Shown here: piece by piece, positions 289 to 62,697 of the stretch
Position numbering within the stretch: the stretch's first letter is position 1
Layout of the letters: each line of letters begins with the position of its first letter
Source of the DNA: Laetmonice hystrix
Taxonomy: Eukaryota
Direction: 5' to 3'
DNA length: 64,000 nt
Assembly: GCA_965235115.1 (NCBI GenBank)
Contig: OZ249437.1
Location: 27,156,001-27,220,000 of the forward strand
Position numbers and translations under genes: made by a program
The notes under the pieces: model-generated
Seen by the model: the letters and a program-made list of their open reading frames with translations, nothing else
Database searches by the model: none
Told to the model about the DNA's origin: nothing

Positions 289-2640
289 TACTAAACCTTT
301 TTGCAAGACGGGGTCTTTTGATAAACATCCGCAGCCGCCGTGGAGCTTGTTTGAATAATTTGGCTCAACCACAACTCCAAGTGTTACCTTTATACCAGTT
401 TTTACTCTGTTTCCTGGTGTAATGGATTGGGTTGACGTGGTGGAGGTCCAGCTGTCGTAACGTATCTATATCGAGAGTCCCCACCCGCCTACTCCCGCCT
501 CAGGCTAGCAGATCCTCGGATTGACTTGAACAGAAACGAGTTCATTCCCGTTCAGACCAATATCTGGCAGGCAAATCCTGAAGACAGTGATGCAGCGGAG
601 GGCGGTATCACATGGATTTCCCATCACTTGTAAGTGCGACTGATGTGGAAAGGCGTGCGTTTTTTCCCCTCCTCCTCGGTTGCATTCGCTTGCGTATTTG
701 TGATATCAAGAGGGGAATGTATGTCGGGCCTGCCTCCTCCATTTCCCCCTAGGTCCTGTCCGACATAGCCTAGCGAGTGGATTCCATTTGGCAGGGAAAT
801 GAACTCATTTTGCGCGTGTGTACTCTACGTGTGCCAGCCTCCTACGCTGAAGAACCTCTCTAAATATTCTCATCTTGGCTGACTGCGAGGAAAGTAAAGT
901 TTGGATTTCGTGTTGCCACTCGACAGCACTGCGTGTAGCAAGTATGAAGCAAGCAGTGGTGGGAGCAAACTTTGGGAGATTCTGATGTCCACGCCGATGG
1001 AAAAGTCATGCTTGAGCCGAGACGAACCGGTCACGTTTCCTTGTGTTCAATTTCTTGGCAACTTTTGTCCAAATCTTGTGGAAGAAAACCAAACAGCAGA
1101 GAAAGTATAAGGTGGGGCCTGTCTGTTTATAGCTGACTAGCAATGACGTCGTTCTGAAAATGTACACTGACGGCTTTCTGTTTTTCGGTTGGAAAAGTTA
1201 GTTTATAAAGCAGCTCTTGTCTCAGTTGTCTAATGTACAGCTAATATTTGATTGATGGTCTCAACAGCATTTCGGTCGCTAGCAACCAAACCGAAGAGGT
1301 TATATTTGTCAAGTTGTCTGCACCCAGCCATGACGTCATCCCGGTGCGTATCATAGCTCTGTAACAGACTGAAGAACCCTTCATGCCTTACCATCGAGTT
1401 TGTGTCAATAATGGCGGCCGTTTGATGGCTCCTCCACCAACTCCTCCCACTCACAATTACCGAGATACTCAGTCACCGTGCCAGATTACAATGTTTGCTA
1501 CAAGCATCGCTCGTTGTCAGCAACATTGCCAGTAAAATGATGAACAGTCGACTTCCAAGTCAGTCCTTGCTGGTTACTTACAGGCCATTTAGCAAATGAA
1601 GCCATTTTGGCAGGCCTTATTACTCACTCTTTGACCCAGGGATTATTAACAATATAGGTTTCCATCTTGCCTGGGGAGAATAAGAGTAGATACCGAGACT
1701 GTGAGAACTTACAGACCTGTTTCAACTTTCATCCACCCTCCTGTCGGAACACTTCTGTAGACTGACCGTGGGACCACGACCAATTTGGTCAATCCAATCA
1801 AATATGATAAACCCGGTCCATTCTTCATAATCATTTCCGAGGTAGGCCTTGACCTCAATATTCCCAAAGATGCTTTAACACTTTGTCAAACCAAATTGCC
1901 AGTTCACCAAGCTTAAGAACCCTAATAGGGTTGGTGACAGTACCCTATCTTTTGGTCATCGACCGCGGAACCCCTGTCTCAGTTCAATCGTAATCATAAA
2001 CCGGAATTGATTTTTTAATATATCCTCTTTCCTCTTTCAGACCTTTAGGCTACATTTCCTTTTTTTGTCCTTTTATGAATTCCTATATTATTCAGACACT
2101 TGTATAGAAGGCATGGACTGCTCATACTCCAAAAGGTAGTGGCAACAGTCGAGGTTGATTATTGTATCCCTTGTGGCTCCATGTCAAGGCCCTTCGAATA
2201 TTGAACGGCATTCAGCAGATCCTACCAGGGATTAAGGTGTTCGCCCCTTTCTACTCGCAATGACCAAGGTAACCTCGGAGTGACTTCAATCCTGGTCGGT
2301 GGCGGGCTGATGGTTTTGATGCTCAGTTATCATATCACATGGGTTGATAAGAAGAAGTAGAACAGCCATTATCCCAATGAATCTCAGCCTCTGCCGCTGA
2401 AGACTTGATGTGGGAGGATCGGGGCGGCCTCTGAGTGCCGGCTGTCCACACTGATGAACTGCGGCAGGGCCATCACTGGGGCTTATCTATGGGAAGTGGG
2501 TAAGGAGTTTGGCCCGGGAGGAGATGGAAGTGGCAGGGTAATAAAGTTAGGGTGCCAGAGGATGATGGATGGGCACGGCCAGCGGCCGGTTTGGTATATG
2601 TCGGGCCTGTTTACGGGCGGCGTGGTCGCCCACCCACCCG

Positions 2641-3660
2641 CCCCGACCAGTCCCACCCGCCCGACCAGTCTCACCGGCGGCAACACTGGGCAGGCCGGCC
2701 AGTCACACCGGCGGCAACACTGGGCAGGCCGGCCAGTCCCACCGGCGGCACCACTGGGCAGGCCGGCCAGTCACACCGACGGCACCACTGGGCAGGCCGA
2801 CCAGTCACACCGACGGCACCACTGGGCAGGCCGACCAGTCTCACCGGCGGCACCACTGGGCAGGCCGGCCAGTCTCACCGGCGGCACCACTGGGCAGGCC
2901 GGCCAGTCTCACCGGCGGCACCACTGGGCAGGCCGACCAGTCTCACCGGCGGCAACACTGGGCAGGCCGACCAGTCACACCGACGGCACCACTGGGCAGG
3001 CCGACCAGTCTCACCGGCGGCACCACTGGGCAGGCCGGCCAGTCTCACCGGCGGCACCACTGGGCAGGCCGGCCAGTCCCACCGGCGGCACCACTGGGCA
3101 GGCCGACCAGTCTCACGGCGGCACCACTGGGCAGGCCGGCCAGTCACACCGGCGGCACCGCGGGGCAGTCCGGCCAGTCACACCGGCGGCACCACTGGGC
3201 AGGCCGGCCAGTCACACCGGGGCCACCACTGGGCAGTCCGGCCAGTCACACCGGCGGCACCACTGGGCAGGCCGGCCAGTCACACCGGCGGCACCACTGG
3301 GCAGGCCGACCAGTCCCACCGGCGGCACCACTGGGCAGGCCGACCAGTCCCACCGGCGGCACCACTGGGCAGGCCGGCCAGTCACACCGACGGCACCACT
3401 GGGCAGGCCGACCAGTCCCACCGGCGGCACCACTGGGCAGGCCGACCAGTCCCACCGGCGGCACCACTGGGCAGGCCGACCAGTCCCACCGGCGGCACCA
3501 CTGGGCAGGCCGGCCAGTCACACCGACGGCACCACTGGGCAGGCCGACCAGTCCCACCGGCGGCACCACTGGGCAGGCCGACCAGTCCCACCGGCGGCAC
3601 CACTGGGCAGGCCGACCAGTCCCACCGGCGGCACCACTGGGCAGTCTGGCCAGTCGTTCC
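2641..3660. repeat. GC-rich 34-bp minisatellite, about 30 copies
   Basis: Unit ccggcggcaccactgggcaggccg(a/g)ccagtc(a/c/t)ca. The 34-aa cycle in all three + frame translations equals 3 x 34 nt. Confidence 0.95.
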
Positions 3661-4788
3661 GGCAGCATGCCGGGAAGGCTCCCCAGTCATGAGACAAGGA
3701 TCTCTTCCACAAAGATGGCACATGATTGTCCTTGTTCATATAACATGTCCACAGTGCCAGTTTTTCGTGCAATAAAAGAACACGGAAAATCTCCTTAAAA
3801 GTTTTCGGTGAAGGGCGCCGCAGTATATTATAAATGGCCACTAGTTCAATGGGCGACTTAACCAAAACGGTTTTCTAACATGGGTCAAACCAAAAGTTTC
3901 CCCTTTCCTGAAGTAATGGTCCACTTCACCAAAAAAGTTCACTTTGATCCCATATGCGACCCACATGTTTAGAATCCTATAGCTATGGGCCTGTAGGTCC
4001 TCTTAAGTGTAGAACACTTTGAAATGAAACCGTCCACGCGAAATTAAACAGGAAGGCGACGATTATTGTATTGTATTGTATTGTCAGGATTGAGGAAATA
4101 ATTGTTCAGTGATGAACTTGTCACCAAAATACCGCCCTCTGCTTTGTTCCATTCTTACACTAATTTCACATTTTGCCCATAGTTTTGTGTTATCATTCTT
4201 AAGATCTCGCGTTTAATTTTATTATTTAAACATTAAAAGCCTACTTTAAATGACGAAAGTGGTACCAGGGTACGTGTACTTTTGGGCCGCAGTGTTTCCG
4301 CCCACAGTAGTGACTCGTATTATGGCTGCCCCCTGGTGAGCGTGACAGGAACTAAGTCCGGAAAATAGATTAGGCAGACTAAGTAAGTGTGCAATGGCTT
4401 GGAAATTGAACCTTTACTGCCCTTAGTATTCGATGGAAGATTCTTTTAACATGATGGGACCTGAGAGCTACTAGAAACGGGAATTGAATTAGGTGGAGAG
4501 CTAATGGTATAGCTGTAGTTAATTAGCGGTAAGCCTGGACAGTAAAGCCTCCCTAGATGTGTTCGTCGTAGAGACCTTGAGGTCGGCGTACTCGTGTGAT
4601 AGAGTCCATTTTCATCTCACCAATGGCAAATGGTCGTTCTAACTGTCATGTCGAGTTAGGAAGAAAGATTAAGGACTAACCAAATGATGAAAGTGTTTGC
4701 ATTGACTGGACTAAGAAAGTTGACGACAGAATCTTAGCGCCTAGACTTTCCATCTGTGAAAGAGACAGACAGACAGATAAACAGGCCG

Positions 4789-49542: not shown

Positions 49543-52500
49543 TTACAGTTCAGTCACCATGGTATCCCCAACGGTATACTGCATCAACATTTCTCCACTC
49601 TTACCGTCTTTAATTTTCACGGGTTGAAGAGTGGCAGTATTCATGTCATATAAATACTGTCGTTCTAAGGCGGCCACCTCCTCGTCAGCGATGCCCAGGG
49701 ATTTCTCCTGATCGTCGTATTCGATTGGTTTGTAACCGATTGAGGTCTCTTCGACTACATCGGGACCCGCGACAAGTATAGTGTTACCCTCGGGAATGTC
49801 GCCCTGTATGTCATCACCACCCTCCTCGTTTTCCTCATCACTCTCCACTTTTGAACTCTCGAAATGTTCTGTGGTTAAGTCAACTTCCACAAAGCTCTCC
49901 TCTCCCATTTCTTCGGTTGTCTGTTTCCGTTTAGGACTTTCCGCATCTGGAACGTAGTCAACAGTTTTTGTCATTTGTTGTTCCGTTGTAGTGACTTTCA
50001 GCAGGTTTCCCTCTTCGTCCTGCACGATTTCCGAATGAACTTTTGGCGGGAGTTGTTGACTCTCAGATTTTGTGGCCACACTGCGTCGTTTGATGTGTTC
50101 AGCCTCCACACCGGGAAGGGTATCTGGAAGGGAGTCATTGTCGTGTTCTCTCTTGGATGCTTCGTCGGAATCTTGAGACATGTTGAGAAACAGTTCGCTT
50201 GACTCAACAGGTGTCCATTGCGGCACCGTAAAGTATATATTTCCAGGGTCAAACCGTGACACAAACCGTTTTGACCTGTCCGATTTGCGGGTCATTGATT
50301 CCTGAGAGGTGACTGGTCCAGACAACTGGATGTCGGCTTCTGTTTTGTAATGTTTGTGATGCTTCACGGCACCATCGATATCCGGTAACTCAAACGAATG
50401 GAGTTTATCGATACGCATCTGACTTGTATTGTCAGACGAAGAGTATCCGGAAGAATTTGTGCTAGTCACAGTATGGTCCTCTTTAACAGGCCGCGAGTAT
50501 GTTGTCGTGTGCACTTCTGATTTCTTGCTTATATTGTCCTTCGGTCCAGACTGTCGAATGTAGGTGGTCGAGTGTTGGCTTCCCTTGGGTGGTGATTTTA
50601 GACGTGTGTAGGTGGTAATCGTTTTCCCTGTGGTCACCCCACGCCCTCCCCCTTCCGTTCCATTCATCTGGCGATTACCGGCTACATCAAGAACGTGCGT
50701 ACTCGAGAACTTCTTGTTATCAGCCGGTTTATCCTCTCGCGTCACAGTGATGTATCGTTCGGTTTTTTCATTCGTTGTCCTGTTCCTTGTTTTATCAGTA
50801 GCCGACGCGGTTTCTCTGGGGGCAGGGCTCATTATCTGTCGCTCGTAAATAGTCCTGTAGCGGCCGCTTGTCGGCGACGAAAGGTTGGAGCTGTCGCTAA
50901 CCGTGGTCACAATTTCACTTTTGTTGACCTTTTGAGCGTCGCCTCCAGTATTCTTGGAATGTTCACTCCATGACTGAACCCCCCTTTCCTCCAGAATTCC
51001 TGCCCCTCCTATTTTGCCCTCGGCAGACAAGGATTCCAACCCGCGTGACGTCACGAAACCGTCACGAGAATTGGCGAGAGCCGGGACAGAGCCCGACTGC
51101 ACCATGACGTTACCTCCCTCTCGGTGGATGTCCTTGACCTGCGTCACCTTCTGCTTCCGTCGGTCAACCACAGCTTCGTACTTCCCCGGAAAGACCCAGG
51201 GGACGAGTTCCGACGTCTTCCCGGTCTCTGAGGATGTCTTTCCACCCTGTGAACGTGAAAGGTTGAACTCAATCTCCTCAAAAATGGCCATTGAGAGACG
51301 TTGTTCCTTTTCCTCTATCTCGGTCCATTCGTATGTCTCCTCCTCGTCTGAATCCTCAGGTTCAGGCTCCGGTTCTGGCTCCGGCGCTGGCTGCCGAGGG
51401 GGAGGGGGAGCGTAGGTGCGTTCTACGATATCCATGATTGTCCTTTCAGGAGAGGCTCGCGTCGTGATTGGAATGTCTCGTGACAGTGAGGGCGGCTGGC
51501 TCTCCTGGACTCGGACCACCTCTTCAATCTCCCGCACCACCGAGTCGATAGCTGCATTAGAGGCGTGCATTTCGTTTATAGTTTGCTCTGCATCCAGTGC
51601 CCTTTGTTCTGCAGTTGTCAGCGCCCTATTCATCGCATTGACTTCATCATCCCAATCCTGCCCAGTCATGTCGGTTTGTACGCAGAATTCCGAGGTTTGA
51701 GGTGGGGCGGGGGGCAGAGACTGAACATGACGTTCTTTCGTGATGTAATGATGCGTTTCCCGGTGAACAGCCGGAGACGCCGGTCGCTCCGGCGGCTTCC
51801 TCGGCAGAATATGTTTGATTATTCGCTCCTTCTTTCGTTCTATTTTCTTTGGGGAAGAGGGCGATTTCTTTGGTTTGGCAATGTCCGGGGTTTGAGTCTG
51901 TTTGTGGTAGATCGTATACTCCTTGTGATCCGGCAGTATTGGATCCTCCGGTTGATATACCTGAACACCTTCTGATACCATATCTCTCACCTCATCTTCA
52001 TTCACATAGACGTTCATTAACTGCTGCCGTTCACCTCCGAAATTAGTTTCAATATCCTGAGCTGCGTATGTGATTTTGGGCATCCCTGGCTCTGGCTTAT
52101 GTTGATTGAACACATAAAAGTTCAGCACTTGATTCTTGTGCATGTTAACCGCCGGTTGTTGGCCTTTAACAGTATAAACTGGTTCTTGACGATCGAGAAG
52201 GTCGGCAACAATCATTGGTTCGTTACTATATGCACCATATTCATCGTCCTCTTGTATGGCAGGTAAGCTGATCGATTGCGCGATATCGTCTATTTCCTGG
52301 CGGGGGTAAACGTACGAAGGCGGTAGAGACAGAGGCAGACTTCTTACAAGTTCCCCTGTGTTCATGCGCAGGTCGATCCGTGTTGGCGAAGGCGTGGATT
52401 GTCTTGACGGATAGTCCTGGAGACTGTGCAGAGAATGCCACTGACCTGTGTATGAACCTAAATTCGCTTCCGAGGGTAAAGTGTTGTAATGTGGGTTATA

Positions 52501-54846
52501 CGACGGAAGGCTTTCGGTGAAACTTGTAGCAGAGGTGTCGTTTGGTGACATAACAGGTTTTGCCAAAGGCCATGTGTTTGTCGAGTACTCAACAGGCGGG
52601 CCATCCATGGAACGTAGCTGTGCTAACAACGAACTTGCAGGGACGTCACGTTGGTTTTCAAGTTCATGAAACACGCGAGTGACGGTTCCTCTGGTGATAG
52701 TGGGGGGATCCACCACGCCTTTTCTCTTATCTTTTTTGTCATCTTCCTGGTAGGCTGGCAAGGGCGGCGGTAAATGGTCATTGTGGTACACATGGACGTT
52801 AGTGGTTGCGTTGGAGTAGGCGTCGTCATACGGAATACGCTCCTCGAATTTCCGTGTCATGGCTGATTTGTCGTCTTCTTCCCCATGCGGTTGGATGACA
52901 AGGTCGTAAAGTCCACCGGCTGAAGTGTTTTGTTTACCGGGCAATGGAAGTGGGCGCAATGATGGGGACCTCCCCTGGGCTTGCCTCCCTCCGATAGGGA
53001 TGGGGCGCATTGATGGAGAACGGACCTGCTTTTGAGGCATCTTCTTAGCAGAGCTTCGTCTATGTTCTATATGTTCAACAATGTTTTTTTCTATGTGCGA
53101 AGTTTTCATAATAGATGACGATGAATGTTGGGATTGCTGGGAATGCTGCGCGGAATTTAGGCGACTGTTGGAAGATGAAGAACTTGCATGTGATTTCCTC
53201 CTGTCTCCATACAAGAATCGTAAGGCCCGCTCAACTGCGTCATCCACAATATACACCGCCTGTTTGTCAACTTCGGTCTGGCGAAATTTCACTCCCTTTT
53301 CTCTCCTACCATATTTGGCTGCTGCTGCTGCTCCTCGCGTTTGCTGCACAACCTCGTGTCTCTCCTCTGTCACGCTGTGCTCGGCTGTGACGCTACGTTT
53401 GGCACCGGCCGCCGCCATGCCCCCATGACTCGCGCTTTGTCGTTTCGCCATTTGGGCTTTAGAGGACGCCACCATGGCGCCCGCTGCGCCCCCTGCACTA
53501 GCCGCACCCATTGCCGCCGACACCGACGACCTAGATTGGACTTTTGATTGGGATTGGGAGGAGGCGGATTGGCCTCGAGAGCTCGCGGCAGCTGATCCGG
53601 ATTGCATCTGCGCACTGGCAGCAGCGGCGCGACCTTCCTGCATTGACATAGACTGAGACCGTGAACTGGACATCTGCTGGGACTGCGAGGCTCCAGCAGC
53701 TGCTGACGCCTTCTGCATTGGGGTCATGAGGTTCCAACTGTAGCTGGACGTTTCCGAGGCCGTCTCCCCTTCGATGTCCTCAACACGAGCCCCCGGTGGC
53801 GCCATCTGCATGGGCAGCGGCATGCTCTTGTTAAATGCCTGCCGCACATTCTCGTATTGCTCCAGATTGGCTATTTTATTCACACGACGTTGCTCCTTTT
53901 TGCTTTTGCTCTGCTTTGACGACGACGATTGGTCCTCTAAAGAACCCTCAAACTCGTCCACAATATCCTGCCACTTATTTACAGCTTCAGCTTTGGGGTC
54001 AGTCTTGCTAAGTAATCCACGTTTTAATCGAAGATCTGCCGATGACTTCCTGGCAGCTTTTGAAACCTTTTTCGATGACTTACTTTGGCTGCTTGAAGTT
54101 GATTCGACAGACACTGAGCTGCTGTTGCCACTCTTACTCCTGCTTCTTTTCTCCTTCTTGCTTTTCGATTTTCCAGACTTTGCAGCAACGGAAGCAGTAG
54201 CAGCTCCACCCTGCTTCTTACTTGAACCTTGTGCACTTACGCTGGACGATTCATGTCTTGAAACCGATAAATCCATGCCCTGGGTCTTCACTTTAGGGGT
54301 CGATGTCCTGTTGGTACGTCCCCTTTTATCTTGTAACTGTGATGGGTCAAACTCGATGTCCGTTTCAGCCTCGGAGTGGTCAGTGACGGTAATGACTGGG
54401 ACGCTCGCCTCTGTGCCAATACTACTCGATGTACCTGCACTTATCCGCCTCTGTCGGCGAATCACTGGTTGGGGATGTTTGATGGCTGATTCATTAAGGC
54501 GTTGTTGGCTTTTACGTGATTGCTGATTGTGGCCCGTGGCGCGACGACTATTTGAAGTATGATTCAAAACTTGCCGCCCACTCGAGCGGGAGCCCGATAC
54601 GGTGAACCTCCGACTGCCAACCCGATTCCGGCCATCGCCGCCAACAACTGAGGCTCTCGTCGTACGAGACGTGCCCTTCTTTGACGCGACCTGCTTCCGG
54701 TGAGATGTAGACTGACGTTTTGCTGGGGACGCTCTCCTGGGTGATCTGCTTGGCCCACGTGGTGTGGGGGTTGTGCTGCGCGAATGTCGGCTGCTGCGGC
54801 CACTGGACGAAAAGTGGCTGGCGCCGATGCTCTCCACCTGACCCAT
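49543..54846 (-). CDS. Large single-exon ORF, 1767 aa, low-complexity Ser/Arg/Lys-rich N-half and acidic C-terminus; candidate signalling scaffold; family not recognised
   Basis: 5.3 kb without a stop. The first ATG (54846, MGQVES) is preceded in frame by TAG (54922-54924) and TGA (54913-54915); the ORF-track start at 54873 is a GTG. A candidate acceptor tgtcctctggccttgttccag lies just upstream (AG at 54949-54948). Confidence 0.88.
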   Translation of the reverse strand: MGQVESIGASHFSSSGRSSRHSRSTTPTPRGPSRSPRRASPAKRQSTSHRKQVASKKGTSRTTRASVVGGDGRNRVGSRRFTVSGSRSSGRQVLNHTSNSRRATGHNQQSRKSQQRLNESAIKHPQPVIRRQRRISAGTSSSIGTEASVPVITVTDHSEAETDIEFDPSQLQDKRGRTNRTSTPKVKTQGMDLSVSRHESSSVSAQGSSKKQGGAATASVAAKSGKSKSKKEKRSRSKSGNSSSVSVESTSSSQSKSSKKVSKAARKSSADLRLKRGLLSKTDPKAEAVNKWQDIVDEFEGSLEDQSSSSKQSKSKKEQRRVNKIANLEQYENVRQAFNKSMPLPMQMAPPGARVEDIEGETASETSSYSWNLMTPMQKASAAAGASQSQQMSSSRSQSMSMQEGRAAAASAQMQSGSAAASSRGQSASSQSQSKVQSRSSVSAAMGAASAGGAAGAMVASSKAQMAKRQSASHGGMAAAGAKRSVTAEHSVTEERHEVVQQTRGAAAAAKYGRREKGVKFRQTEVDKQAVYIVDDAVERALRFLYGDRRKSHASSSSSNSRLNSAQHSQQSQHSSSSIMKTSHIEKNIVEHIEHRRSSAKKMPQKQVRSPSMRPIPIGGRQAQGRSPSLRPLPLPGKQNTSAGGLYDLVIQPHGEEDDKSAMTRKFEERIPYDDAYSNATTNVHVYHNDHLPPPLPAYQEDDKKDKRKGVVDPPTITRGTVTRVFHELENQRDVPASSLLAQLRSMDGPPVEYSTNTWPLAKPVMSPNDTSATSFTESLPSYNPHYNTLPSEANLGSYTGQWHSLHSLQDYPSRQSTPSPTRIDLRMNTGELVRSLPLSLPPSYVYPRQEIDDIAQSISLPAIQEDDEYGAYSNEPMIVADLLDRQEPVYTVKGQQPAVNMHKNQVLNFYVFNQHKPEPGMPKITYAAQDIETNFGGERQQLMNVYVNEDEVRDMVSEGVQVYQPEDPILPDHKEYTIYHKQTQTPDIAKPKKSPSSPKKIERKKERIIKHILPRKPPERPASPAVHRETHHYITKERHVQSLPPAPPQTSEFCVQTDMTGQDWDDEVNAMNRALTTAEQRALDAEQTINEMHASNAAIDSVVREIEEVVRVQESQPPSLSRDIPITTRASPERTIMDIVERTYAPPPPRQPAPEPEPEPEPEDSDEEETYEWTEIEEKEQRLSMAIFEEIEFNLSRSQGGKTSSETGKTSELVPWVFPGKYEAVVDRRKQKVTQVKDIHREGGNVMVQSGSVPALANSRDGFVTSRGLESLSAEGKIGGAGILEERGVQSWSEHSKNTGGDAQKVNKSEIVTTVSDSSNLSSPTSGRYRTIYERQIMSPAPRETASATDKTRNRTTNEKTERYITVTREDKPADNKKFSSTHVLDVAGNRQMNGTEGGGRGVTTGKTITTYTRLKSPPKGSQHSTTYIRQSGPKDNISKKSEVHTTTYSRPVKEDHTVTSTNSSGYSSSDNTSQMRIDKLHSFELPDIDGAVKHHKHYKTEADIQLSGPVTSQESMTRKSDRSKRFVSRFDPGNIYFTVPQWTPVESSELFLNMSQDSDEASKREHDNDSLPDTLPGVEAEHIKRRSVATKSESQQLPPKVHSEIVQDEEGNLLKVTTTEQQMTKTVDYVPDAESPKRKQTTEEMGEESFVEVDLTTEHFESSKVESDEENEEGGDDIQGDIPEGNTILVAGPDVVEETSIGYKPIEYDDQEKSLGIADEEVAALERQYLYDMNTATLQPVKIKDGKSGEMLMQYTVGDTMVTEL

Positions 54847-54921
54847 GGGGCCAGCGACGCGGGCCGCATACACAATCAGGACGTGGTGACGAGACCGAGG
54901 GACACTCCGGCGTCAGCGTAA

Positions 54922-54936
54922 CTATCGTGCCGTCAT
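54922..54936 (-). promoter_or_regulatory. Candidate upstream ORF (MTAR*) in the 5' leader of the large ORF
   Basis: gacATGacggcacgaTAG; the ATG is 90 nt upstream of the main ATG and downstream of the candidate acceptor. Confidence 0.4.
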
Positions 54937-55494
54937 GTCGCCGGCGCCTGGAACAAGGCCAGAGGACACTATAGGCGAACTTTCCCTGTAGCCCTCCCCC
55001 TAGACAGTATCACACCGGCATAAACAACATGCAAATTACCCATACACACACTCTCTATATCACTCAAATACTACACAAATTCCTCCATGTCGGTGGGAGT
55101 TGGTATTTAACGGTAAACTTGAGTTATTTTTAATTAACATTAGATACTTTATAATTCCGAGCAGTTTGGTAAATTGTTGAAAATAAGATAGTAAATCTTC
55201 ATTTAAGTTATGCACACGTGTTACTCTATTTCTAAGTGACACCAAAACGGGAATCTTTATATCTCTGTATAAAAGTAATGACTCTTATGGCCTTGCATGC
55301 AAATTGCCAGTAACGTTGGAGAATAAATGATTAGGTATAAGGAGGTTGATCTAGGCTAATCATTAGCTTGAACTCGCATCCTGACCGGGACTCCGACAGC
55401 CTTCAACCTCTCAACCTTATGCGACAGACCATAGGCCTATATTTGTGAATCGTTTGCAAATAGGCCTATTATAATTACTCTCCGTATCTCTGTC

Positions 55495-55523
55495 TTTCTG
55501 TCTGTCTCTGCCTGTCTCTCTGA

Positions 55524-55559
<36 letters not shown>

Positions 55560-55570
55560 ATCTCTCTCTC
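55495..55570. repeat. (TGTC)n/(TC)n compound microsatellite
   Basis: Runs of tgtc and tc. Confidence 0.85.
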
Positions 55571-56774
55571 CGAAATTAGTTACCAAGAAGTCATTTGTGA
55601 AGGTCAGTGACACAGAGAAATGGAAAAATGCTGATAGGATAATTGGAATTCCAATAATTATACGATCATTCATAATGGTGGACACTCTTTTGTAATGGGT
55701 CATAGTTGACTGCAGGGCTTAAATATCAATTAAAATCTAAGTATGGCTTCGTTTGGCCATGTAAACAGTCTATAGTACGCATGCGCCAGATGACGATGAT
55801 TAAAACGCCATGATACCTGTGACGGCATGTGCCCGAGACTTTTGATGGATGTGCGTTGGTCGCGACCTTTAGAGCTATAGTTCAGACTTATGAGGTCAAA
55901 TACGGTCGACTGCATGAAGTGGGCAGTTGGTCTGATCTGAATGAATATCTATGTACAGGTTAGATACAGCGCCACCTATAGGCCCATCGGCGCACCGCGT
56001 ATTACTATGTTATTTTGCAGACACAAAGGCACAAAGGTATAGGACATTAATACCTCGTCAGTGGTTATCTTTCACAGATGTTTCAGCATAATATACATCT
56101 ACCAGTTGCAGTATATTTCCGATATAATATGTTCGTAAGCACGTAGAGATAGCATGCATGATGCTTGTAAATGAGCATGTGGCTTTGTATGGTTTTGCGA
56201 ACGGTGTTTCTGGTGCTTGAACTACATTTGAATATTTTCGTATCATTAATCATACTTACATAATTATGAAAACAGTGGCCCCCAGCATCGACCCGTGAGA
56301 ATTAACCGCTACCGCAGCGTAGATTAAACACTTAAATCAGGGCTGCTGATGGCACGGTATTCCAAATTTTATAGTCAAAATTAAATTTTCTTGGTCTGAC
56401 TCCCCCCCTCCCCCCCCCAAAAAAAACCCCAATATTATGCAGTTTACTATACGGTTCTGTGTTTCCTTAGAAATATGGAAATAATAATATTCATCTCACT
56501 GTATAAATAACGTAAATTCTTAAATGTGAAATTACTCAGTCATTACCAATACATTGGTGACCCCTGCCCCCAAGCTAAAAAAAGAATTCAACCGCGTTGT
56601 AAAGAGGGGGGGGGGGGGGTTGGCCCTGCCCACGAGTGCCCTTGGCCTCTGGTCCCGCGGTGCCTTCGGTTTTTTTATCACGGTAGTCAGTCAACTCTCA
56701 GTTTGACTGCATGGAAGGCTGCTCCTCTGCATTATCTCCTTCAGATGCTCATTTCTCATTGGGTGTATGGGTCC

Positions 56775-57959: not shown

Positions 57960-60394
57960 CGTGGCTGTTTGGAACTAGATAGGTGTAATTTTGGAACATG
58001 GAAGGGCCGTAAAAAGGGTTCTTTATTGGGAGCTTATAGAGGAGGTCGGGAAGGTTTTTCGATAGGCTGCTAAAGCTTGGGACAGCTCCGAATTGTCTCG
58101 AGAGTTGGAATCTCAGCAAAGAAGATATTTTGAACACGATCGTATGCAATACTTTAATTTAATCAGTGAGTTTGTGATGATGAGATTTAAATTTCAATCC
58201 CAGTTTCTCATGATCAGTGATAAAAGTGTCGGCTGTCTAACCCAGCCGATAAACAAATCGGGTAAATATCTGGCCGGACGATATGTAACCTGCCTATACC
58301 CTTGCGGTAAACAGCGCTACCCTCAGCGTTACGTTTATTTCTGTAGCTATTTTGAACTAGATATGTACTTTTGCAACATCGGAGGGTGGTAAAAAAAACT
58401 TACGAACGTCGAACGTATGTTCTACCACTGGTCTGTCTACAGGGTTAATGGGCATATCGAGGCAAAAATTCGCTTCCGTTATAGTACGGTCGGTGCTATA
58501 CGCATTGTCATTGTCATTGGGTGTGAACATTGTTGCCGTCCACTGATACATGTCTACCAGACGTTTTCTAATCTAATAGTTTAAACAATCCTCCTCCTGT
58601 ACTTTTGTTAATAAAATCGACCTAAGACATTTTACAAATTTACCGTATTTCCTCAAATCGTATCGCCCTTAGGTACATCCCCCGCTACTCCCGAGACCTG
58701 GCGACGGGCCCGCTCAGGACAGAGCTTCGCGTACTTCTCTCCTAATATACCATTTTATATCATTTTGAATAATACTAAATGGCATTAAAGGTAAAAGTAT
58801 ATGTGGGACAAGTTTACCACAAAAAGAAGGTCTGAAATATAGACGCGTTCGGGCGGGAAATATCGCTGCATGAGTCTGGAATCCTTTTCGCATAAAATCG
58901 AAATGTTGCACCTTAAACGCTTAAACAGTTTAACATTTACGGTAGGATGTGGATTTCCCAACATAAACTACAGCGTCTGTAGAAAATCGTTATTTACGTC
59001 ACCAAAGGCATTGTCTTTTGATGTTCACGACAGTGTAACATAACTACCCTTGGTCAGTCAACTCACCTATGGATGCTGAAGAATGTCATCGATGGTAGAC
59101 GCAAGAGTGCTGTAGTCGGTGAACAAGGCCGCAGTGTCTTTCAGTCGACCAGATGGCTCATGTTCAAACAACGAGGAACGTTTGAGGAAGCTCCACATGA
59201 AAGAGAATATGAGCATGTCAGAATATGGTGGCCCATCGCCGAACACAGATGAACAATGCGGCTGGGAGAGTGTTGTCTACCCTTTGGAGCTTGTACGCGC
59301 TAAGCTATACGCGTTCCTCTTCGCTGCCCACCAGAATAACTATGCAATACAACTATTGAGCCGTAGGGCCCGATGGCATCTCGTTTTAATGCTGAACTTC
59401 CACATTCATGTTCAACTATGTCAGAATCGTAAACGCGATGGAAACCAGGCTGCAGCGTTGAAAGGATGTTGAAACAGTGTCCCGCTCAGGTCAGATGTAA
59501 CGTTGATGTTTTTCCCGCTGCCTTAGACCAAGCCGAGGTTCTCCGTTCCCGATAGATAAAGGGGGCTGTCTTCGGTCGAAATAACACGTCTCAGTCCGTT
59601 AAAAACGCTCTACTAACTGCTGATGGTACTGCTCTTATTGTGAATTCATACGTACCTTGATTGACATGACAATAGATTACAGATTTGAATATTAATAGAT
59701 GATTAATGGCATAAGATTGCCCAAACGTGTAAGCGATGAATTACATATTAGCCAAGACGGAAAAAAATAAAAAAAACAACAAACAAAAAACAATCAATGC
59801 CAAAAAAAGGGAGATCATGACACAGCAAATGGTCTTTCACGCTTCTGTTGAAAGAAACTGCCTCATGAGTTTGGCGATGTTTCTGGAACCGGTAGCGGCA
59901 TAAGTTTATTATTCCTTCATAATTATAATGATGTTTTCTCAACTGCATTGGACTAGATTGTGCCCTTCTCAAAAAAACCCCTCCTCACCATCTACGGGGG
60001 GAGTATGCATGGCAGACTTCCAAGAAGAGGTCGCTGTAATGTATTTTGACCCTTTGGTGCACCTTGTGCTGCCAGATGAATCCGTAATTCACACGGAGCA
60101 GTGTTTTAGTGACTCCGAAGGCGCCTGTCTGCACCTGACGTCACGCATGGTCCCGCCCTGTGGGTTTCTGGGAGGTACCAAGTGATGGAGCGTCTCGCTC
60201 TGTCCCCGCCCACCGGAGAGAGTCACTGTGGTCAGTCTGAGGACGCCTGGCCTATACCTATAACCTGTGGGTGGTCACATGGTGTCGTCGAGTGCAGGTT
60301 GTGGTAAAAGACATTGACCTTTCCACAGAGAACGAACTGAAACATTCTGAGGTCTCGATCCCCGGTGGGCGGTGTCAAATGGGCCTCAATCCAA

Positions 60395-61152
60395 ATAGCC
60401 GATCCCACCCGGCCTCACCCACATAGCTGATCCTACACACCCGGTCTCACCCACATAGCCGATCCCATACACCCGGCCTCACCCACATAGCCGACCCCAT
60501 ACACCCGGCCTCACCCACACAGCCGATCCCATACACCCGGCCTCACTCACATGGCCGATCGCACCCGACCTCACCCACATAGCCGACCCCATACACCCGG
60601 CCTCACCCACATAGCCGATCCCATACACCCGGCCTCACCCACATAGCCGACCCCATACACCCGGCCTCACCCACATAGCCGACCCCATACACCCGGCCTC
60701 ACCCACATAGCCGATCCCATACACCCGGCCTCACCCACATAGCCGATCCCATACACCCGGCCTCACCCACATAGCCGACCCCATACACCCGGCCTCACCC
60801 ACATAGCCGACCCCATACACCCGGCCTCACCCACATAGCCGATCCCATACACCCGGCCTCACCCACATAGCCGATCCCATACACCCGGCCTCACCCACAT
60901 AGCCTCACCCACCCAGCCTCACCCACATAGCCGATCCCATACACCCGGCCTCACCCACATAGCCGATCCCATATACACCCGGCCTCACTCACATGGCCGA
61001 TCCCACCCGGCCTCACCCACATAGCCGATCCAACCCAGCCTCACCCACATAGCCGATCCCATCCAGCCTCACCCACATAGCCGATCCCATACACCCGGCC
61101 TCACCCACATAGCCGATCCCATACACCCGGCCTCACCCACATAGCCGACCTC
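60395..61152. repeat. C-rich 34-bp minisatellite, about 22 copies
   Basis: Unit cacccggcctcacccacatagccga(t/c)cccataca, with a few truncated units. Confidence 0.95.
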
Positions 61153-61302
61153 ACTGCGGCTTCATCCACATTGTCGATCTCTGTCATTATGTTTTGATCG
61201 GTTACAAATCGGCGAATTTTTAACCAATTTTGAGATCCACCGTTACCAACCTGGATATATATAGGCCTAATTCAAGTCAGTTCAGGGTCTGTGTGAAACC
61301 TG

Positions 61303-61508
61303 GAATGCACAGAGGCCAATTGCATGCATCAGATTTCCTGCCCCAAATAGTCCAGTTCCGCATGTATGTACATGTAATCGGTTCCTGTGTCACATGACCA
61401 ACACAAATACTTTGAGAGAAAGAACAGGGCCTAAATTATACCCCAGGAACTGGACTATTTGGGGCCGAAAATCTGATGCATGCAAGTGGGCTCCTGCAGA
61501 TGCATTTC
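61303..61508. mobile_element. MITE-like inverted-repeat element
   Basis: 61321-61359 versus 61446-61484 match at 37 of 39 positions; weaker outer pairing. Confidence 0.7.
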
Positions 61509-62697
61509 AATAAAGCCCAAAGATATCTTTGAAAACATCGCTGGAGCCAGGTGCGAGGTTTTTATTGAAACACTCGCTCTCTCCCCATCCAGACTGCACT
61601 AGTCCAAAAGACATCTTTGGCAAAGATATTTTTGGCAAAGATATCTTTTGATATTGAAACTGGTTTCACATGAGGAGGGCGGGGGACATCGGGACACGTT
61701 CTCAGCTTATCAGAGAGTTGTCTCCAGTTGATAATACAGATATCGTATTATAATATCCCAACCTTAAAAAGTAGAAATGCCCTGAGGATATGGTCCACCA
61801 TACTCCCAGGGATAAGGTCAAACTACCAGAGTATTGTAAGGTCAAACATTTACCATGTTCCGCCCACTTCCAACCGGACTCCGACGCCCATGGTCTGTCG
61901 TTACATGTAATGTCCATACCCGTCAAGTCATGCATTTTTTTCTCGAATCCTTTTACCGCGCCACACCTACCTAACATGGTTCCTGTCACATTGGGGAAAC
62001 GATTATTCATATTGTGCAAATAGGACAAGTGGCATGTACCGGAGTTGTCCCCACCTTACTTCAAATGCATGAATGTGTAGGCGTATACCTACTTTAACCG
62101 CTTAAATAATTCTTATATATAAAGTCTTGTATACACGTATTGCTATTCGCGGTATTAGCCGTCACTATTGCCATTTATAAATTAATCCTGCATTTTGCAG
62201 GCTTGCACCAGACCGACCTTTTCAAATAAGGCACATTTTATTACAATTGTAAAATTGTAATAGTATATTATGCTCCTATAATAACTCTCTCTCTATCAGG
62301 ATAAAAAAAGATAGAAATATATCTTTGTTTAGTGGAGTAAAAAAATTCATTGAAATTATAGACCCCTGAATTTGGGCATGCGGGTTTCTGTGACATTCAT
62401 GATTTTTTGGTCCCTCAAAAATCAAAGCCATATATTTTGGTACATGACTTTTTGTATAATAAAATGCAACATTCTAATTGTATGTGTCTTCCTGTAGGTT
62501 AGTTCCATGGTGAAAATAACTATATTATATCAAGTTGGAGAATTTTTGGGTGTTTAATAGGTTTTGGACATCAAATTGCTCAGTTATCTTATAGAATCAC
62601 CTACAGAGAGATAGCCGAACATATTTGATAAGCTCTATCGGACGGTTGTTACATCATTTGTTGTAACACGCCCCAACCCGCCGTCCTGAGCGTCACT

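What the first reader, a model, noticed from the sequence alone, without database searches (positions are those of the whole stretch)
49543..54846. Unrecognised 1767-aa single-exon protein that looks like a membrane-anchored PKA/phosphatase scaffold
Seen: no globular domain is evident. In order it has MGQVES, a polybasic Ser/Arg region, PVITVT, KGVKF, AVYIVDDAVERAL, proline motifs (RPLPLP, LPPSY), a probable coiled coil (about 51503-51654), an acidic tail and terminal VTEL. Known: AKAP5 and AKAP12 are largely disordered, encoded mostly by one big exon, and combine membrane targeting, PKA-RII anchoring and, for AKAP5, calcineurin docking. Inference: a lineage-specific or highly diverged AKAP-like scaffold. 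Short motifs occur by chance in long disordered proteins, so co-occurrence is suggestive only.
Basis: partly seen in the sequence, partly recalled or inferred. Interest (0 to 1): 0.8.

Follow-up and report, generated by a model that had tools for sequence, protein, structure and literature searches.

The report
Unnamed conserved AKAP-like disordered scaffold gene
This is a real, intronless, single-copy invertebrate gene for a 1,767-residue floppy protein of an unnamed but widespread family, whose best-conserved short motifs suggest a membrane-tethered docking platform for protein kinase A and other partners; no binding has been shown.

Summary
It is a real gene. It is single copy in this genome. 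Of 20 within-species SNPs, 16 are synonymous, and the CDS carries no indels. Two orthologues give dN/dS 0.13. An HMM profile finds 40 representative relatives, none named. Pfam, PDB and the ESM Atlas give nothing, and AlphaFold2 finds no globular fold.

Conservation is concentrated in about 12 short islands.
- The N-terminal MGQxxS myristoylation signal.
- A PxIxIT-like P-x-I-T-[IV]-T.
- KGVKF, kept in nearer relatives only.
- An amphipathic helix A-x-x-[IF]-V-[DE]-x-[AV]-[IL]-x-x-A, present in about 22 of 25 members.
- A C-terminal T-x-[LF] PDZ-type ending, with T(-2) invariant in 26 sequences.

The helix profile's best natural match in the whole PDB is an AKAP (Ht31-type) RII-binding peptide. 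Docking to this genome's own RII docking domain gave only weak support (0.34 against a best control of 0.01).

The proline motifs and the coiled coil are lineage-specific.

Verdict: a new, unnamed AKAP-like scaffold family. PKA anchoring is plausible (about 50%) but unproven, and there are no expression data.

The parts
49543..54846 (-). Complete intronless CDS, 1,767 codons plus TAA stop
   Evidence: The N- and C-termini are colinear with homologues. It is single copy in the genome. 16 of 20 within-species SNPs are synonymous and there are no indels in the CDS.
54829..54846 (-). MGQVES: N-myristoylation consensus (Gly2, Ser6)
   Evidence: MGQxxS is kept in every homologue whose N-terminal exon was recovered, including the most distant one, P0045.
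54547..54828 (-). Polybasic Ser/Arg-rich stretch (residues 7-100, net charge about +19)
   Evidence: It is not conserved in the P0004-P0009 group, whose N-terminus is acidic.
54382..54399 (-). PVITVT: PxIxIT-like (calcineurin-docking type) motif followed by an acidic stretch
   Evidence: P-x-I-T-[IV]-T occurs in the window protein, P0001, P0013, P0015, P0016 and P0045. It is degenerate in P0002 and P0017 and lost in P0004-P0009.
53947..53976 (-). KWQDIVDEFE: conserved N-terminal island of unknown role
   Evidence: W292, E298 and F299 are nearly invariant, and the island is present in distant members.
53284..53298 (-). KGVKF: RVxF-type (PP1-docking type) motif, 9 residues before the helix
   Evidence: It is the only RVxF match in the protein. 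It is conserved in the nearer relatives (P0001, P0002, P0004-P0009, P0011-P0013, P0015), has related forms in P0019 (KLVQF) and P0032 (KGVKS), and is absent in many others.
53209..53271 (-). Amphipathic helix VDKQAVYIVDDAVERALRFLY: candidate PKA R-subunit (D/D domain) docking helix
   Evidence: It fits the AKAP helix pattern and is conserved at the same aligned position in about 22 of 25 members. The best natural PDB hit of its profile is the AKAP peptide 2DRN_C. Docking to the genome's own RII D/D scored 0.34 against a best control of 0.01, which the tool calls weak support.
53191..53202 (-). RRKS: basic R-R-x-S type (PKA-consensus-like) site just after the helix
   Evidence: A basic cluster with Ser follows the helix in most members, for example RRKS, KRKS, RRSVS, RRSIS and RRSRS. 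That it is a substrate site is an inference.
52672..52707 (-). PPTITRGTVTRV: conserved island of unknown partner
   Evidence: present in 23 of 27 members.
52102..52230 (-). YSNEPMIVADLL and VNMHKNQVLNFYVFNQ: two conserved islands of unknown partner
   Evidence: N875 and N909 are invariant in 27 sequences.
51889..51906 (-). HKQTQT: canonical K-x-TQT LC8/DYNLL-binding-type motif, the only TQT in the protein
   Evidence: TQT is conserved in 24 of 27 family members. TQT is the core of most known LC8 motifs in disordered regions (10.1101/2023.09.15.557927). LC8 genes are present in this genome.
51730..51759 (-). ETHHYITKER: conserved island of unknown partner
51556..51657 (-).
   Evidence: AF2 predicts a helix at residues 1064-1097 with pLDDT 62-74. 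It is conserved only in P0001-P0003.
51127..51345 (-). Central block (residues 1168-1240): acidic run, EEKEQRLSMAIFEEIEF, a QGG turn, then PW.FP.KYEAVVDRRKQK. This is the most conserved part of the family
   Evidence: There is no PDB relative. AF2 gives a helix when the block is folded alone (pLDDT up to 87) and strands in a longer context. In many homologues its first half also fits the AKAP helix pattern (EQRIAMAIFEEV).
49990..50259 (-). SRFDPGNIYFTVP, DNDSLPDTLP and DEEGNLLKVT: conserved C-terminal islands
49546..49653 (-). LYDMNTATLQPV ... GDTMVTEL-COOH: conserved C-terminus ending in a class I PDZ-ligand-type T-x-[LF]
   Evidence: T at position -2 is invariant in 26 sequences and the last residue is always L or F.

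Best explanation
The ORF is a functional, single-copy, intronless gene for a roughly 190-kDa intrinsically disordered protein. It belongs to an unnamed family found in many invertebrate genomes. The protein is best read as a string of short docking motifs on a flexible chain.

Proposed mechanism:
1. The N-terminal Gly is myristoylated. In this lineage the adjacent polybasic stretch helps hold the chain on the inner face of a membrane. (Inferred.)
2. The conserved amphipathic helix at residues 526-546 docks the dimerisation/docking domain of a PKA regulatory-subunit dimer, so the protein acts as an A-kinase anchoring protein. An R-R-x-S site lies immediately beside the helix. (Inferred; weak in-silico support.)
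3. The K-Q-TQT motif recruits an LC8 dimer, which would pair two chains. (Inferred.)
4. The invariant C-terminal T-x-L binds a PDZ-domain partner, giving a second point of localisation. (Inferred.)
5. In this and related lineages, PVITVT (PxIxIT type) and KGVKF (RVxF type) could bring calcineurin and PP1 next to the kinase, as AKAP79 and AKAP220 do. (Inferred.)

The gene's reality, the selective constraint on it and the pattern of motif conservation are shown. Every binding step is inferred.
For: Real gene under selection:
- 16 synonymous against 4 non-synonymous SNPs among the haplotypes in three runs of one sample. 17 of the 20 are at third codon positions. There are no indels in 4.25 kb of CDS, against 2 in the 1.75 kb upstream. 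The binomial P is about 4e-7 against 25% synonymous.
- dN/dS is 0.127 between orthologues P0004 and P0005, and below 0.3 in every 150-codon window.
- Full-length ORFs of 1,000-2,000 aa exist in many genomes.
- The gene is single copy here.

Disorder: Pfam, PDB and the Atlas gave nothing. AF2 mean pLDDT was 46.6.

Helix:
- The pattern A-x-x-[IF]-V-[DE]-x-[AV]-[IL]-x-x-A is at the same aligned place in about 22 of 25 members, including ones with less than 25% overall identity.
- Its profile, searched against 177,635 distinct PDB sequences, gives as best natural single-stretch hit the 24-residue AKAP peptide of 2DRN. The alignment is iEekAaeIVDdaIerA against IEEAASRIVDAVIEQV, with E 0.26.
- Complex prediction used two copies of this genome's own RII D/D (L006) and residues 505-560. 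It scored 0.34 against a best control of 0.01, verdict 'weak support'. The runs agree in at least 86% of contacts and the partner pLDDT is at least 54.
- RI, RII and RIIa-domain genes exist in the genome.

Other motifs:
- MGQxxS is conserved wherever the N-terminus is recovered.
- TQT is conserved in 24 of 27 members and is the only TQT in the protein.
- C-terminal T(-2) is invariant in 26 sequences.
- PxIxIT-like and RVxF motifs are conserved in several lineages.
Against: - No binding has been measured.
- The complex score is at the tool's threshold. The tool says such passes are more often wrong than right unless the guess was likely beforehand. Because AKAP-D/D complexes are solved, a pass may also reflect memory of those structures.
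- The PDB hit has E 0.26, which is not significant on its own.
- The generic AKAP pattern is expected about 0.8 times by chance in a protein of this size and composition (own arithmetic from the composition).
- Pfam RII_binding_1 and other AKAP models do not match.
- KGVKF and PVITVT are missing in many members, so phosphatase docking cannot be a family-wide function.
- The most conserved blocks (central block, PPTITRG, YSNEP, HYITKER) have no assigned partner, so the core function may be something else.
- No RNA evidence exists for this species, and the runs that hold the locus are genomic DNA.
Confidence: 0.5

Rival explanations
1. It is a conserved disordered scaffold or hub, but not a PKA anchor. 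The amphipathic helix docks another four-helix-bundle D/D module, such as RIIa-domain 'R2D2' proteins of the SPA17/ROPN1 type or Dpy-30-type domains (as in the ciliary AKAP RSP3), or a quite different partner. The family's core job would then lie in the unassigned central blocks together with LC8 and a PDZ protein, for example cytoskeletal, ciliary or junctional organisation.
For: The genome encodes at least two non-PKA RIIa-domain proteins (L007, L008). RSP3 is an AKAP-type protein whose helices bind RIIa and Dpy-30 domains of non-PKA proteins, and it also binds LC8 arrays (PMC3494852, PMC3392930). The strongest conservation lies in blocks without any PKA link. The PKA docking prediction is only weak.
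Against: The helix resembles an RII-binding peptide (Ht31 type) more than any other natural PDB sequence. The docking to RII exceeded all controls by 0.33. A basic R-R-x-S cluster sits next to the helix in most members. N-myristoylation and a PDZ ligand point to a membrane rather than an axoneme.
Confidence: 0.27
2. It is a very diverged orthologue of an already named protein, for example a vertebrate or insect AKAP such as AKAP12/gravin, AKAP5, AKAP2 or Akap200, or another named scaffold. On this reading it is not a new family.
For: AKAPs evolve fast outside their motifs. AKAP12 and Akap200 are N-myristoylated, AKAP5 combines PxIxIT with an RII helix, and AKAP12 is mostly one large exon (established knowledge, recalled from memory). 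The searchable collections carry few names for invertebrate proteins, so an existing annotation could have been missed.
Against: There are no Pfam hits to any AKAP model or any other family at E<=1. An exhaustive HMM search of 1.84 billion representatives returned only 40 proteins, all unnamed. Three word-index searches returned no named protein. The conserved blocks (TQT, HYITKER, the central block, the C-terminus) are not features I know from those AKAPs.
Confidence: 0.12
3. It is a chance or decaying ORF (pseudogene, transposon remnant or low-complexity artefact) with no protein product.
For: There are no RNA data. The composition is low-complexity and Ser-rich. An antisense 250-aa ORF also exists.
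Against: A 5.3-kb open frame is kept in dozens of species. dN/dS is 0.13. Within-species SNPs are 16 synonymous against 4 non-synonymous, with none frame-breaking. The gene is single copy. The ATG sits in a good context (cccATGG).
Confidence: 0.02

Closest known systems
AKAP5 (AKAP79/150)
   Same: It is a largely disordered membrane-associated scaffold that uses basic regions for membrane binding, has a PxIxIT-type calcineurin site and an amphipathic RII-binding helix, and puts kinase and phosphatase side by side (PMC8560092, for PKA plus calcineurin anchoring).
   Different: There is no detectable sequence homology and no Pfam hit. The window protein is four times longer. Here the order is PxIxIT, then RVxF, then helix, all in the N-terminal third. 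AKAP5 has no N-myristoylation, no TQT motif and no PDZ-ligand C-terminus (my knowledge).
AKAP12 (gravin/SSeCKS) and Drosophila Akap200
   Same: These are N-myristoylated, polybasic, long, acidic and disordered PKA scaffolds.
   Different: There is no homology signal. Their RII helix lies near the C-terminus. None of this family's conserved blocks is known from them.
AKAP13 (AKAP-Lbc) Ht31 helix, PDB 2DRN chain C
   Same: This is the closest sequence match to the family's helix profile among natural PDB chains: I-E-E-x-A-x-x-I-V-D-x-[AV]-I-E.
   Different: The likeness is confined to 18 residues and has E 0.26. AKAP13 is a DH-PH RhoGEF, and nothing else is shared.
AKAP11 (AKAP220)
   Same: It combines RII helices with a K-V-x-F PP1-docking motif on a long, mostly single-exon protein (my knowledge).
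   Different: There is no match to the AKAP_110-type Pfam models. In this family the RVxF motif is not kept family-wide.
RSP3/RSPH3 (radial spoke AKAP)
   Same: It is an AKAP-type protein with amphipathic helices for D/D domains, and LC8 dimers bind its disordered N-terminal part (PMC3494852, PMC3392930).
   Different: RSP3 is an axonemal protein with its own conserved Pfam domain. It is not myristoylated and has no PDZ ligand. No homology was detected.
D-AKAP2 (AKAP10)
   Same: It is an AKAP that ends in a class I PDZ ligand (T-K-L) (my knowledge).
   Different: AKAP10 has RGS-like domains, which were not found here.

Membership tests
A-kinase anchoring proteins (functional class) | A 14-18 residue amphipathic helix fitting the R-subunit D/D docking pattern | tested here: met
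   AVYIVDDAVERA fits [AVLISE]xx[AVLIF][AVLI]xx[AVLI][AVLIF]xx[AVLISE] (pattern recalled from the AKAP literature). It is conserved at the same aligned position in about 22 of 25 members. The nearest natural PDB sequence is an AKAP peptide. The pattern alone is expected about 0.8 times by chance per protein, so conservation carries the weight.
A-kinase anchoring proteins (functional class) | Direct binding of PKA RI or RII dimers through that helix | tested here: inconclusive
   Complex prediction with two copies of the genome's own RII D/D and residues 505-560 scored 0.34 against a best control of 0.01, verdict 'weak support'. In the tool's calibration the mark was reached by 51 of 78 solved complexes and 2 of 108 mismatched pairs. 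At 0.60 or under it was reached by only 5 of those 78 solved complexes and by all 4 mismatches that passed. The runs agree in at least 86% of contacts and the partner pLDDT is at least 54.
A-kinase anchoring proteins (functional class) | A targeting element for a subcellular site | tested here: met
   The M-G-x-x-x-S N-terminus is conserved. There is a polybasic stretch in this lineage and an invariant C-terminal T-x-[LF]. This is sequence-level evidence only.
A-kinase anchoring proteins (functional class) | Co-anchoring of other signalling enzymes | tested here: inconclusive
   PxIxIT-like and RVxF motifs are present and conserved in several but not all lineages. No binding test was done.
AKAP5, AKAP12, AKAP2 and AKAP11 homology families (Pfam WSK, AKAP2_C, AKAP_110, RII_binding_1) | A significant match to the family's profile HMM | tested here: not met
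   There were 0 Pfam families at E<=1 on the whole protein. No AKAP model matched the helix peptides at E<=10.
LC8/DYNLL partners | An 8-residue motif with a TQT core in a disordered region | tested here: met
   HKQTQT is at residues 981-986 and is the only TQT in the protein. It lies in a region with pLDDT below 50. TQT is conserved in 24 of 27 members. The motif definition comes from 10.1101/2023.09.15.557927. Binding was not tested.
Class I PDZ ligands | C-terminal [ST]-x-hydrophobic-COOH | tested here: met
   The protein ends in -T-E-L. T(-2) is invariant and the last residue is L or F in 26 sequences. The partner is unknown.
Calcineurin substrates and scaffolds | A PxIxIT docking motif | tested here: inconclusive
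   PVITVT fits P-x-[IV]-x-[IV]-T. Equivalent motifs occur in P0001, P0013, P0015, P0016 and P0045 but are lost in P0004-P0009.
PP1-interacting proteins | An RVxF docking motif | tested here: inconclusive
   KGVKF is the only match in the protein. It is invariant in nearer relatives and absent in many distant ones.

The most novel reading that the evidence does not exclude
This is an old, invertebrate-wide and so far unnamed AKAP family that does in one chain what vertebrates split between AKAP79, gravin and AKAP220. It would be a myristoylated, LC8-paired, PDZ-tethered platform that holds PKA next to calcineurin and PP1. Its most conserved central block may be a second D/D-docking helix or a new binding module.
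Probability: 0.33. Interest if true: 0.65.

Novelty: new member of a known kind. Interest (0 to 1): 0.5.

Why it matters
AKAPs are defined by function and have arisen many times. Very few are known outside vertebrates, flies and nematodes, so how spiralian animals such as annelids and molluscs compartmentalise cAMP signalling is largely unknown. That includes the classical cAMP-dependent plasticity models.

A conserved, single-copy candidate with a clear, mutable helix would give a directly testable handle. It also carries an LC8 motif, a PDZ ligand and, in some lineages, phosphatase-docking motifs.

The family is also a clean example of a roughly 1,800-residue protein with no fold. Selection acts along its whole length (dN/dS 0.13), while only about a dozen short islands stay recognisable across deep divergence. 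Several of those islands have no known partner.

Tried and rejected
- **Family and structure searches:** Pfam on the whole protein and on helix peptides gave nothing relevant. PDB by sequence with the whole protein and with the central block profile gave nothing. The ESM Atlas gave no usable hit.
- **Names:** three word-index searches and two cluster look-ups returned no named relative, so I could not name the family or place its members taxonomically.
- **Expression:** two searches for sequencing runs found only three runs of one sample. Laid on 50600-56599, they cover gene and upstream intergenic DNA alike, with heterozygous bubbles and no joints. They are therefore genomic DNA and say nothing on expression or on a 5'-UTR intron.
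- **Transcript contigs:** I hoped the short Logan contigs of homologues were transcripts. L012 shows an intron-like interruption between conserved exons, and L011 has stop-rich flanks, so they are genomic.
- **Structure prediction:** residues 700-1250 gave mean pLDDT 46.6. The central block folded alone gave pLDDT 63.8 as a helix, which contradicts the strands seen in the longer model. No fold search was run on such models because matches would be meaningless.
- **Complex prediction:** RII D/D with the helix gave 'weak support' only.
- **Papers:** searches for an annelid or mollusc AKAP of this kind found nothing relevant. A search for a citable source of the AKAP pattern failed.
- **Rejected readings:** a spurious ORF or pseudogene; a larger multi-exon gene extending beyond the ORF (the termini are conserved); and the proline motifs and coiled coil as family features.
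Full report
**1. Observation**

The window holds one very long open frame on the minus strand, 49543..54873. From the ATG at 54846 (context cccATGG) it encodes 1,767 residues and ends at a TAA at 49543-49545. An in-frame stop lies 22 codons upstream of the ATG.

| Motif | Residues | Note |
|---|---|---|
| MGQVES | 1-6 | |
| Ser/Arg-rich polybasic stretch | 1-100 | net charge +19 |
| PVITVT | 150-155 | |
| KGVKF | 517-521 | the only RVxF-type match in the protein |
| AVYIVDDAVERAL | 530-542 | |
| RPLPLP | 631 | |
| LPPSY | 841 | |
| Acidic tail | 1601-1700 | net charge -22 |
| VTEL | C-terminus | |

The protein has 13% Ser and 0.1% Cys. No domain was found:
- Pfam gave no hit at E<=1.
- PDB sequences gave only noise.
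- The ESM Atlas gave nothing usable.
- AlphaFold2 with a 27-sequence alignment gave mean pLDDT 46.6 over residues 700-1250.

**2. Is it a real gene?**

Yes. Four lines of evidence agree.
- **Conservation.** A word-index search found nine full-length relatives at 27-69% identity. An exhaustive HMM search with a profile of residues 700-1767 found 40 representative clusters, 23 of them at E<1e-30.
- **Between-species selection.** Two orthologues for which DNA could be fetched (P0004 and P0005, 84% identical) give dN/dS 0.127. Every 150-codon window lies between 0.06 and 0.29, so the 'disordered' linkers are constrained too.
- **Within-species selection.** Three public runs of one sample hold the locus as genomic contigs with heterozygous bubbles. 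Of 20 single-base differences inside the CDS, 16 are synonymous and 17 are at third codon positions. There is no indel in 4.25 kb of CDS, against two in the 1.75 kb upstream. The binomial P is about 4e-7 against 25% synonymous.
- **Copy number.** The gene is single copy in the 627-Mb genome.

The CDS is a single exon here, because the conserved N-terminus (MGQ) and the conserved C-terminus (TEL-stop) both lie in this ORF and the homologues are colinear. In more distant species the gene has introns (L012).

Expression could not be shown. No RNA run holds the sequence, and the three runs that do are DNA.

Earlier notes of this scan on other windows describe the organism as a worm with a giant cuticle collagen. 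That suggests an annelid, but I did not verify it.

**3. Surroundings**

On the + strand, from about 7 kb to 38 kb, lie exons for three laminin-G domains and an EGF domain. Its 3' end faces the 3' end of the gene studied here.

**4. Where conservation lies**

In a 27-member alignment, mean similarity to the query is 0.26. It rises above 0.5 only in short islands:
- the amphipathic helix (534-540)
- DPPTITRGTVTRVFH (713-727)
- YGAYSNEPMIVADLL (870-884)
- VNMHKNQVLNFYVFNQ (900-916)
- TIYHKQTQT (978-986)
- ETHHYITKER (1030-1040)
- a 73-residue central block (1168-1240), the strongest of all
- RFDPG (1531-1535)
- DEEGNLLKV (1610-1618)
- the C-terminus

N-terminal islands (KWQDIVDEFE, and NLEQYENVRQ.F..S.PLP) are also shared by all members whose N-terminal part was recovered.

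- **MGQxxS.** It is present in every homologue with a recovered N-terminus, including the most distant one, P0045. Gly2 with Ser6 is the classical N-myristoylation signal (established knowledge).
- **PVITVT.** P-x-I-T-[IV]-T followed by acidic residues occurs in P0001, P0013, P0015, P0016 and P0045 (PEIVIT). It is degenerate in P0002 and P0017 and lost in the P0004-P0009 group. It fits the PxIxIT calcineurin-docking type.
- **KGVKF.** It is invariant in the nearer relatives. Related forms occur in P0019 (KLVQF) and P0032 (KGVKS), and it is absent in many others.
- **The helix.** A-x-x-[IF]-V-[DE]-x-[AV]-[IL]-x-x-A-[LI] sits at the same aligned position in about 22 of 25 members, even at less than 25% overall identity. 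In most members a basic cluster with Ser follows it (RRKS here; KRKS, RRSVS, RRSIS and RRSRS elsewhere).
- **The C-terminus.** Thr at position -2 is invariant in 26 sequences and the last residue is always L or F. This is the class I PDZ-ligand form.
- **Not conserved beyond close relatives.** RPLPLP, LPPSY, the coiled coil and the polybasic character of the N-terminus.

- **K-x-TQT.** HKQTQT at residues 981-986 is the only TQT in the protein. It lies in a segment with pLDDT below 50 and is conserved in 24 of 27 members. TQT is the core of most experimentally verified LC8/DYNLL motifs, which are 8-residue strands in disordered regions; the BMF reporter peptide has the same K-x-TQT form (10.1101/2023.09.15.557927). 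LC8 genes are present in this genome.
- **The central block.** It consists of an acidic run, EEKEQR[IL].MAIFEE[IV]EF, a QGG turn, then P[WF]W.P.K[YF]EA.VDRRKQK. It has no PDB relative. AlphaFold2 makes it a helix when folded alone (pLDDT up to 87) and strands in the longer model, so its conformation is undecided. In many homologues its first half (EQRIAMAIFEEV) also fits the AKAP helix pattern. It could be a second D/D-docking helix, but that is speculation.

**5. Tests of the AKAP reading**

(a) *Pattern.* The generic AKAP helix pattern is permissive. With this protein's composition it is expected about 0.8 times per protein (my arithmetic). The argument therefore rests on conservation, not on the match itself.

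(b) *PDB search.* A profile of the 31-residue helix region (A6) was searched against all 177,635 distinct PDB sequences. The top hits were de novo designed repeat proteins, which scored through many weak repeats. The best natural, single-stretch hit was 2DRN chain C, described as a '24-residues peptide from an a-kinase anchoring protein'. The alignment was iEekAaeIVDdaIerA against IEEAASRIVDAVIEQV. E is 0.26, so it is not significant by itself. Very few AKAP peptides of 20 residues or more are in the PDB, so the rank is telling.

(c) *Docking.* The genome encodes several possible docking partners:
- an RII subunit (exon 1 in L006)
- an intronless full-length RII-like copy (L010)
- an RI subunit (L009)
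- two non-PKA RIIa-domain proteins (L007, L008)

A complex prediction used two copies of the L006 D/D domain (45 residues) and residues 505-560. It scored 0.34 in three runs, against a best control of 0.01, and the tool's verdict was 'weak support'. In the tool's calibration the mark was reached by 51 of 78 solved complexes and 2 of 108 mismatched pairs. At 0.60 or under it was reached by only 5 of those 78 solved complexes and by all 4 mismatches that passed. The runs agree in at least 86% of contacts and the partner pLDDT is at least 54. Because similar complexes are solved, a pass may reflect likeness rather than binding.

(d) *Pfam.* Pfam's AKAP models (RII_binding_1, WSK, AKAP2_C, AKAP_110) do not match. 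The protein is therefore not a homologue of AKAP5, AKAP12, AKAP2 or AKAP11. It can only be an AKAP in the functional sense.

**6. Most likely mechanism**

Every step here is inferred.
- The chain is anchored at a membrane by N-myristate, helped in this lineage by the polybasic stretch.
- It is localised a second time by its C-terminal PDZ ligand.
- It is paired by an LC8 dimer at the TQT site.
- It carries a PKA holoenzyme on the helix at 526-546, with an R-R-x-S site beside it.
- In this and some related lineages, calcineurin (PVITVT) and PP1 (KGVKF) could be held nearby, as in AKAP79 (PKA plus calcineurin; PMC8560092) and AKAP220.

I put about 0.5 on this reading.

The main rival (about 0.27) keeps the scaffold but gives the helix another partner. 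Candidates are RIIa-domain or Dpy-30-domain proteins, as with the radial-spoke AKAP RSP3, which also binds LC8 (PMC3494852, PMC3392930). On that reading the unassigned central blocks carry the core function.

A diverged orthologue of an already named protein remains possible (about 0.12), because the collections I could search carry almost no names for invertebrate proteins. A non-functional ORF is excluded for practical purposes.

**7. Novelty and verdict**

No name, Pfam family, solved structure or paper could be tied to this family. Functionally it looks like a new member of a known kind: an AKAP-type multivalent scaffold made of short linear motifs. Its combination of motifs (myristoyl, PxIxIT, RVxF, D/D helix, TQT, PDZ ligand) is one I do not know from any single described AKAP.

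The interest is moderate. It offers a concrete, testable candidate for PKA compartmentalisation in a poorly studied animal group, and several deeply conserved motifs still lack a partner. Nothing about its binding or expression has been shown.

Noticed in passing
window 2409-3800: A GC-rich stretch (62% GC against about 43% around it) is open in all three + frames for about 410-427 codons and in several minus frames. It shows repeated peptide units of the type GRPAQWCRRWDW. It is probably a minisatellite or tandem repeat rather than a gene.
   Followed up: no
window about 6979-37632, + strand: A multi-exon gene encodes three laminin-G domains and an EGF domain (exons near 7.2, 18.2, 19.7, 23.4, 24.3, 28.7, 35.4 and 37.2 kb). 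It is convergent with the gene studied here. The domain types were verified; orthology to EGFLAM/pikachurin was not.
   Followed up: partly
L010 (G000:C1:8463134-8466241), + strand 1327-2571: An uninterrupted 415-codon frame encodes a complete PKA type II regulatory subunit: a D/D domain, an RRHSVS inhibitor site and two cNMP-binding domains. It exists in addition to a multi-exon RII gene (L006 on C13). It may be an intact intronless retrocopy.
   Followed up: no
window 54922-54950, minus strand: A 4-codon upstream ORF (ATG at 54936, TAG at 54924-54922) lies in the presumed 5' UTR. A polypyrimidine-AG (ttgttccag) ends at 54948 and could be a 5'-UTR splice acceptor. No RNA data were available to test either.
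   Followed up: no
window 60001-62000: This 2-kb bin has a strong negative GC skew (-0.29) and a raised GC content (53%), unlike its neighbours.
   Followed up: no
L001 17075-18419: A PiggyBac-type transposase (DDE_Tnp_1_7) in two broken pieces lies just downstream of the orthologue P0005 in another species.
   Followed up: no
window 63.5-63.8 kb: A run of 149 N is present.
   Followed up: no
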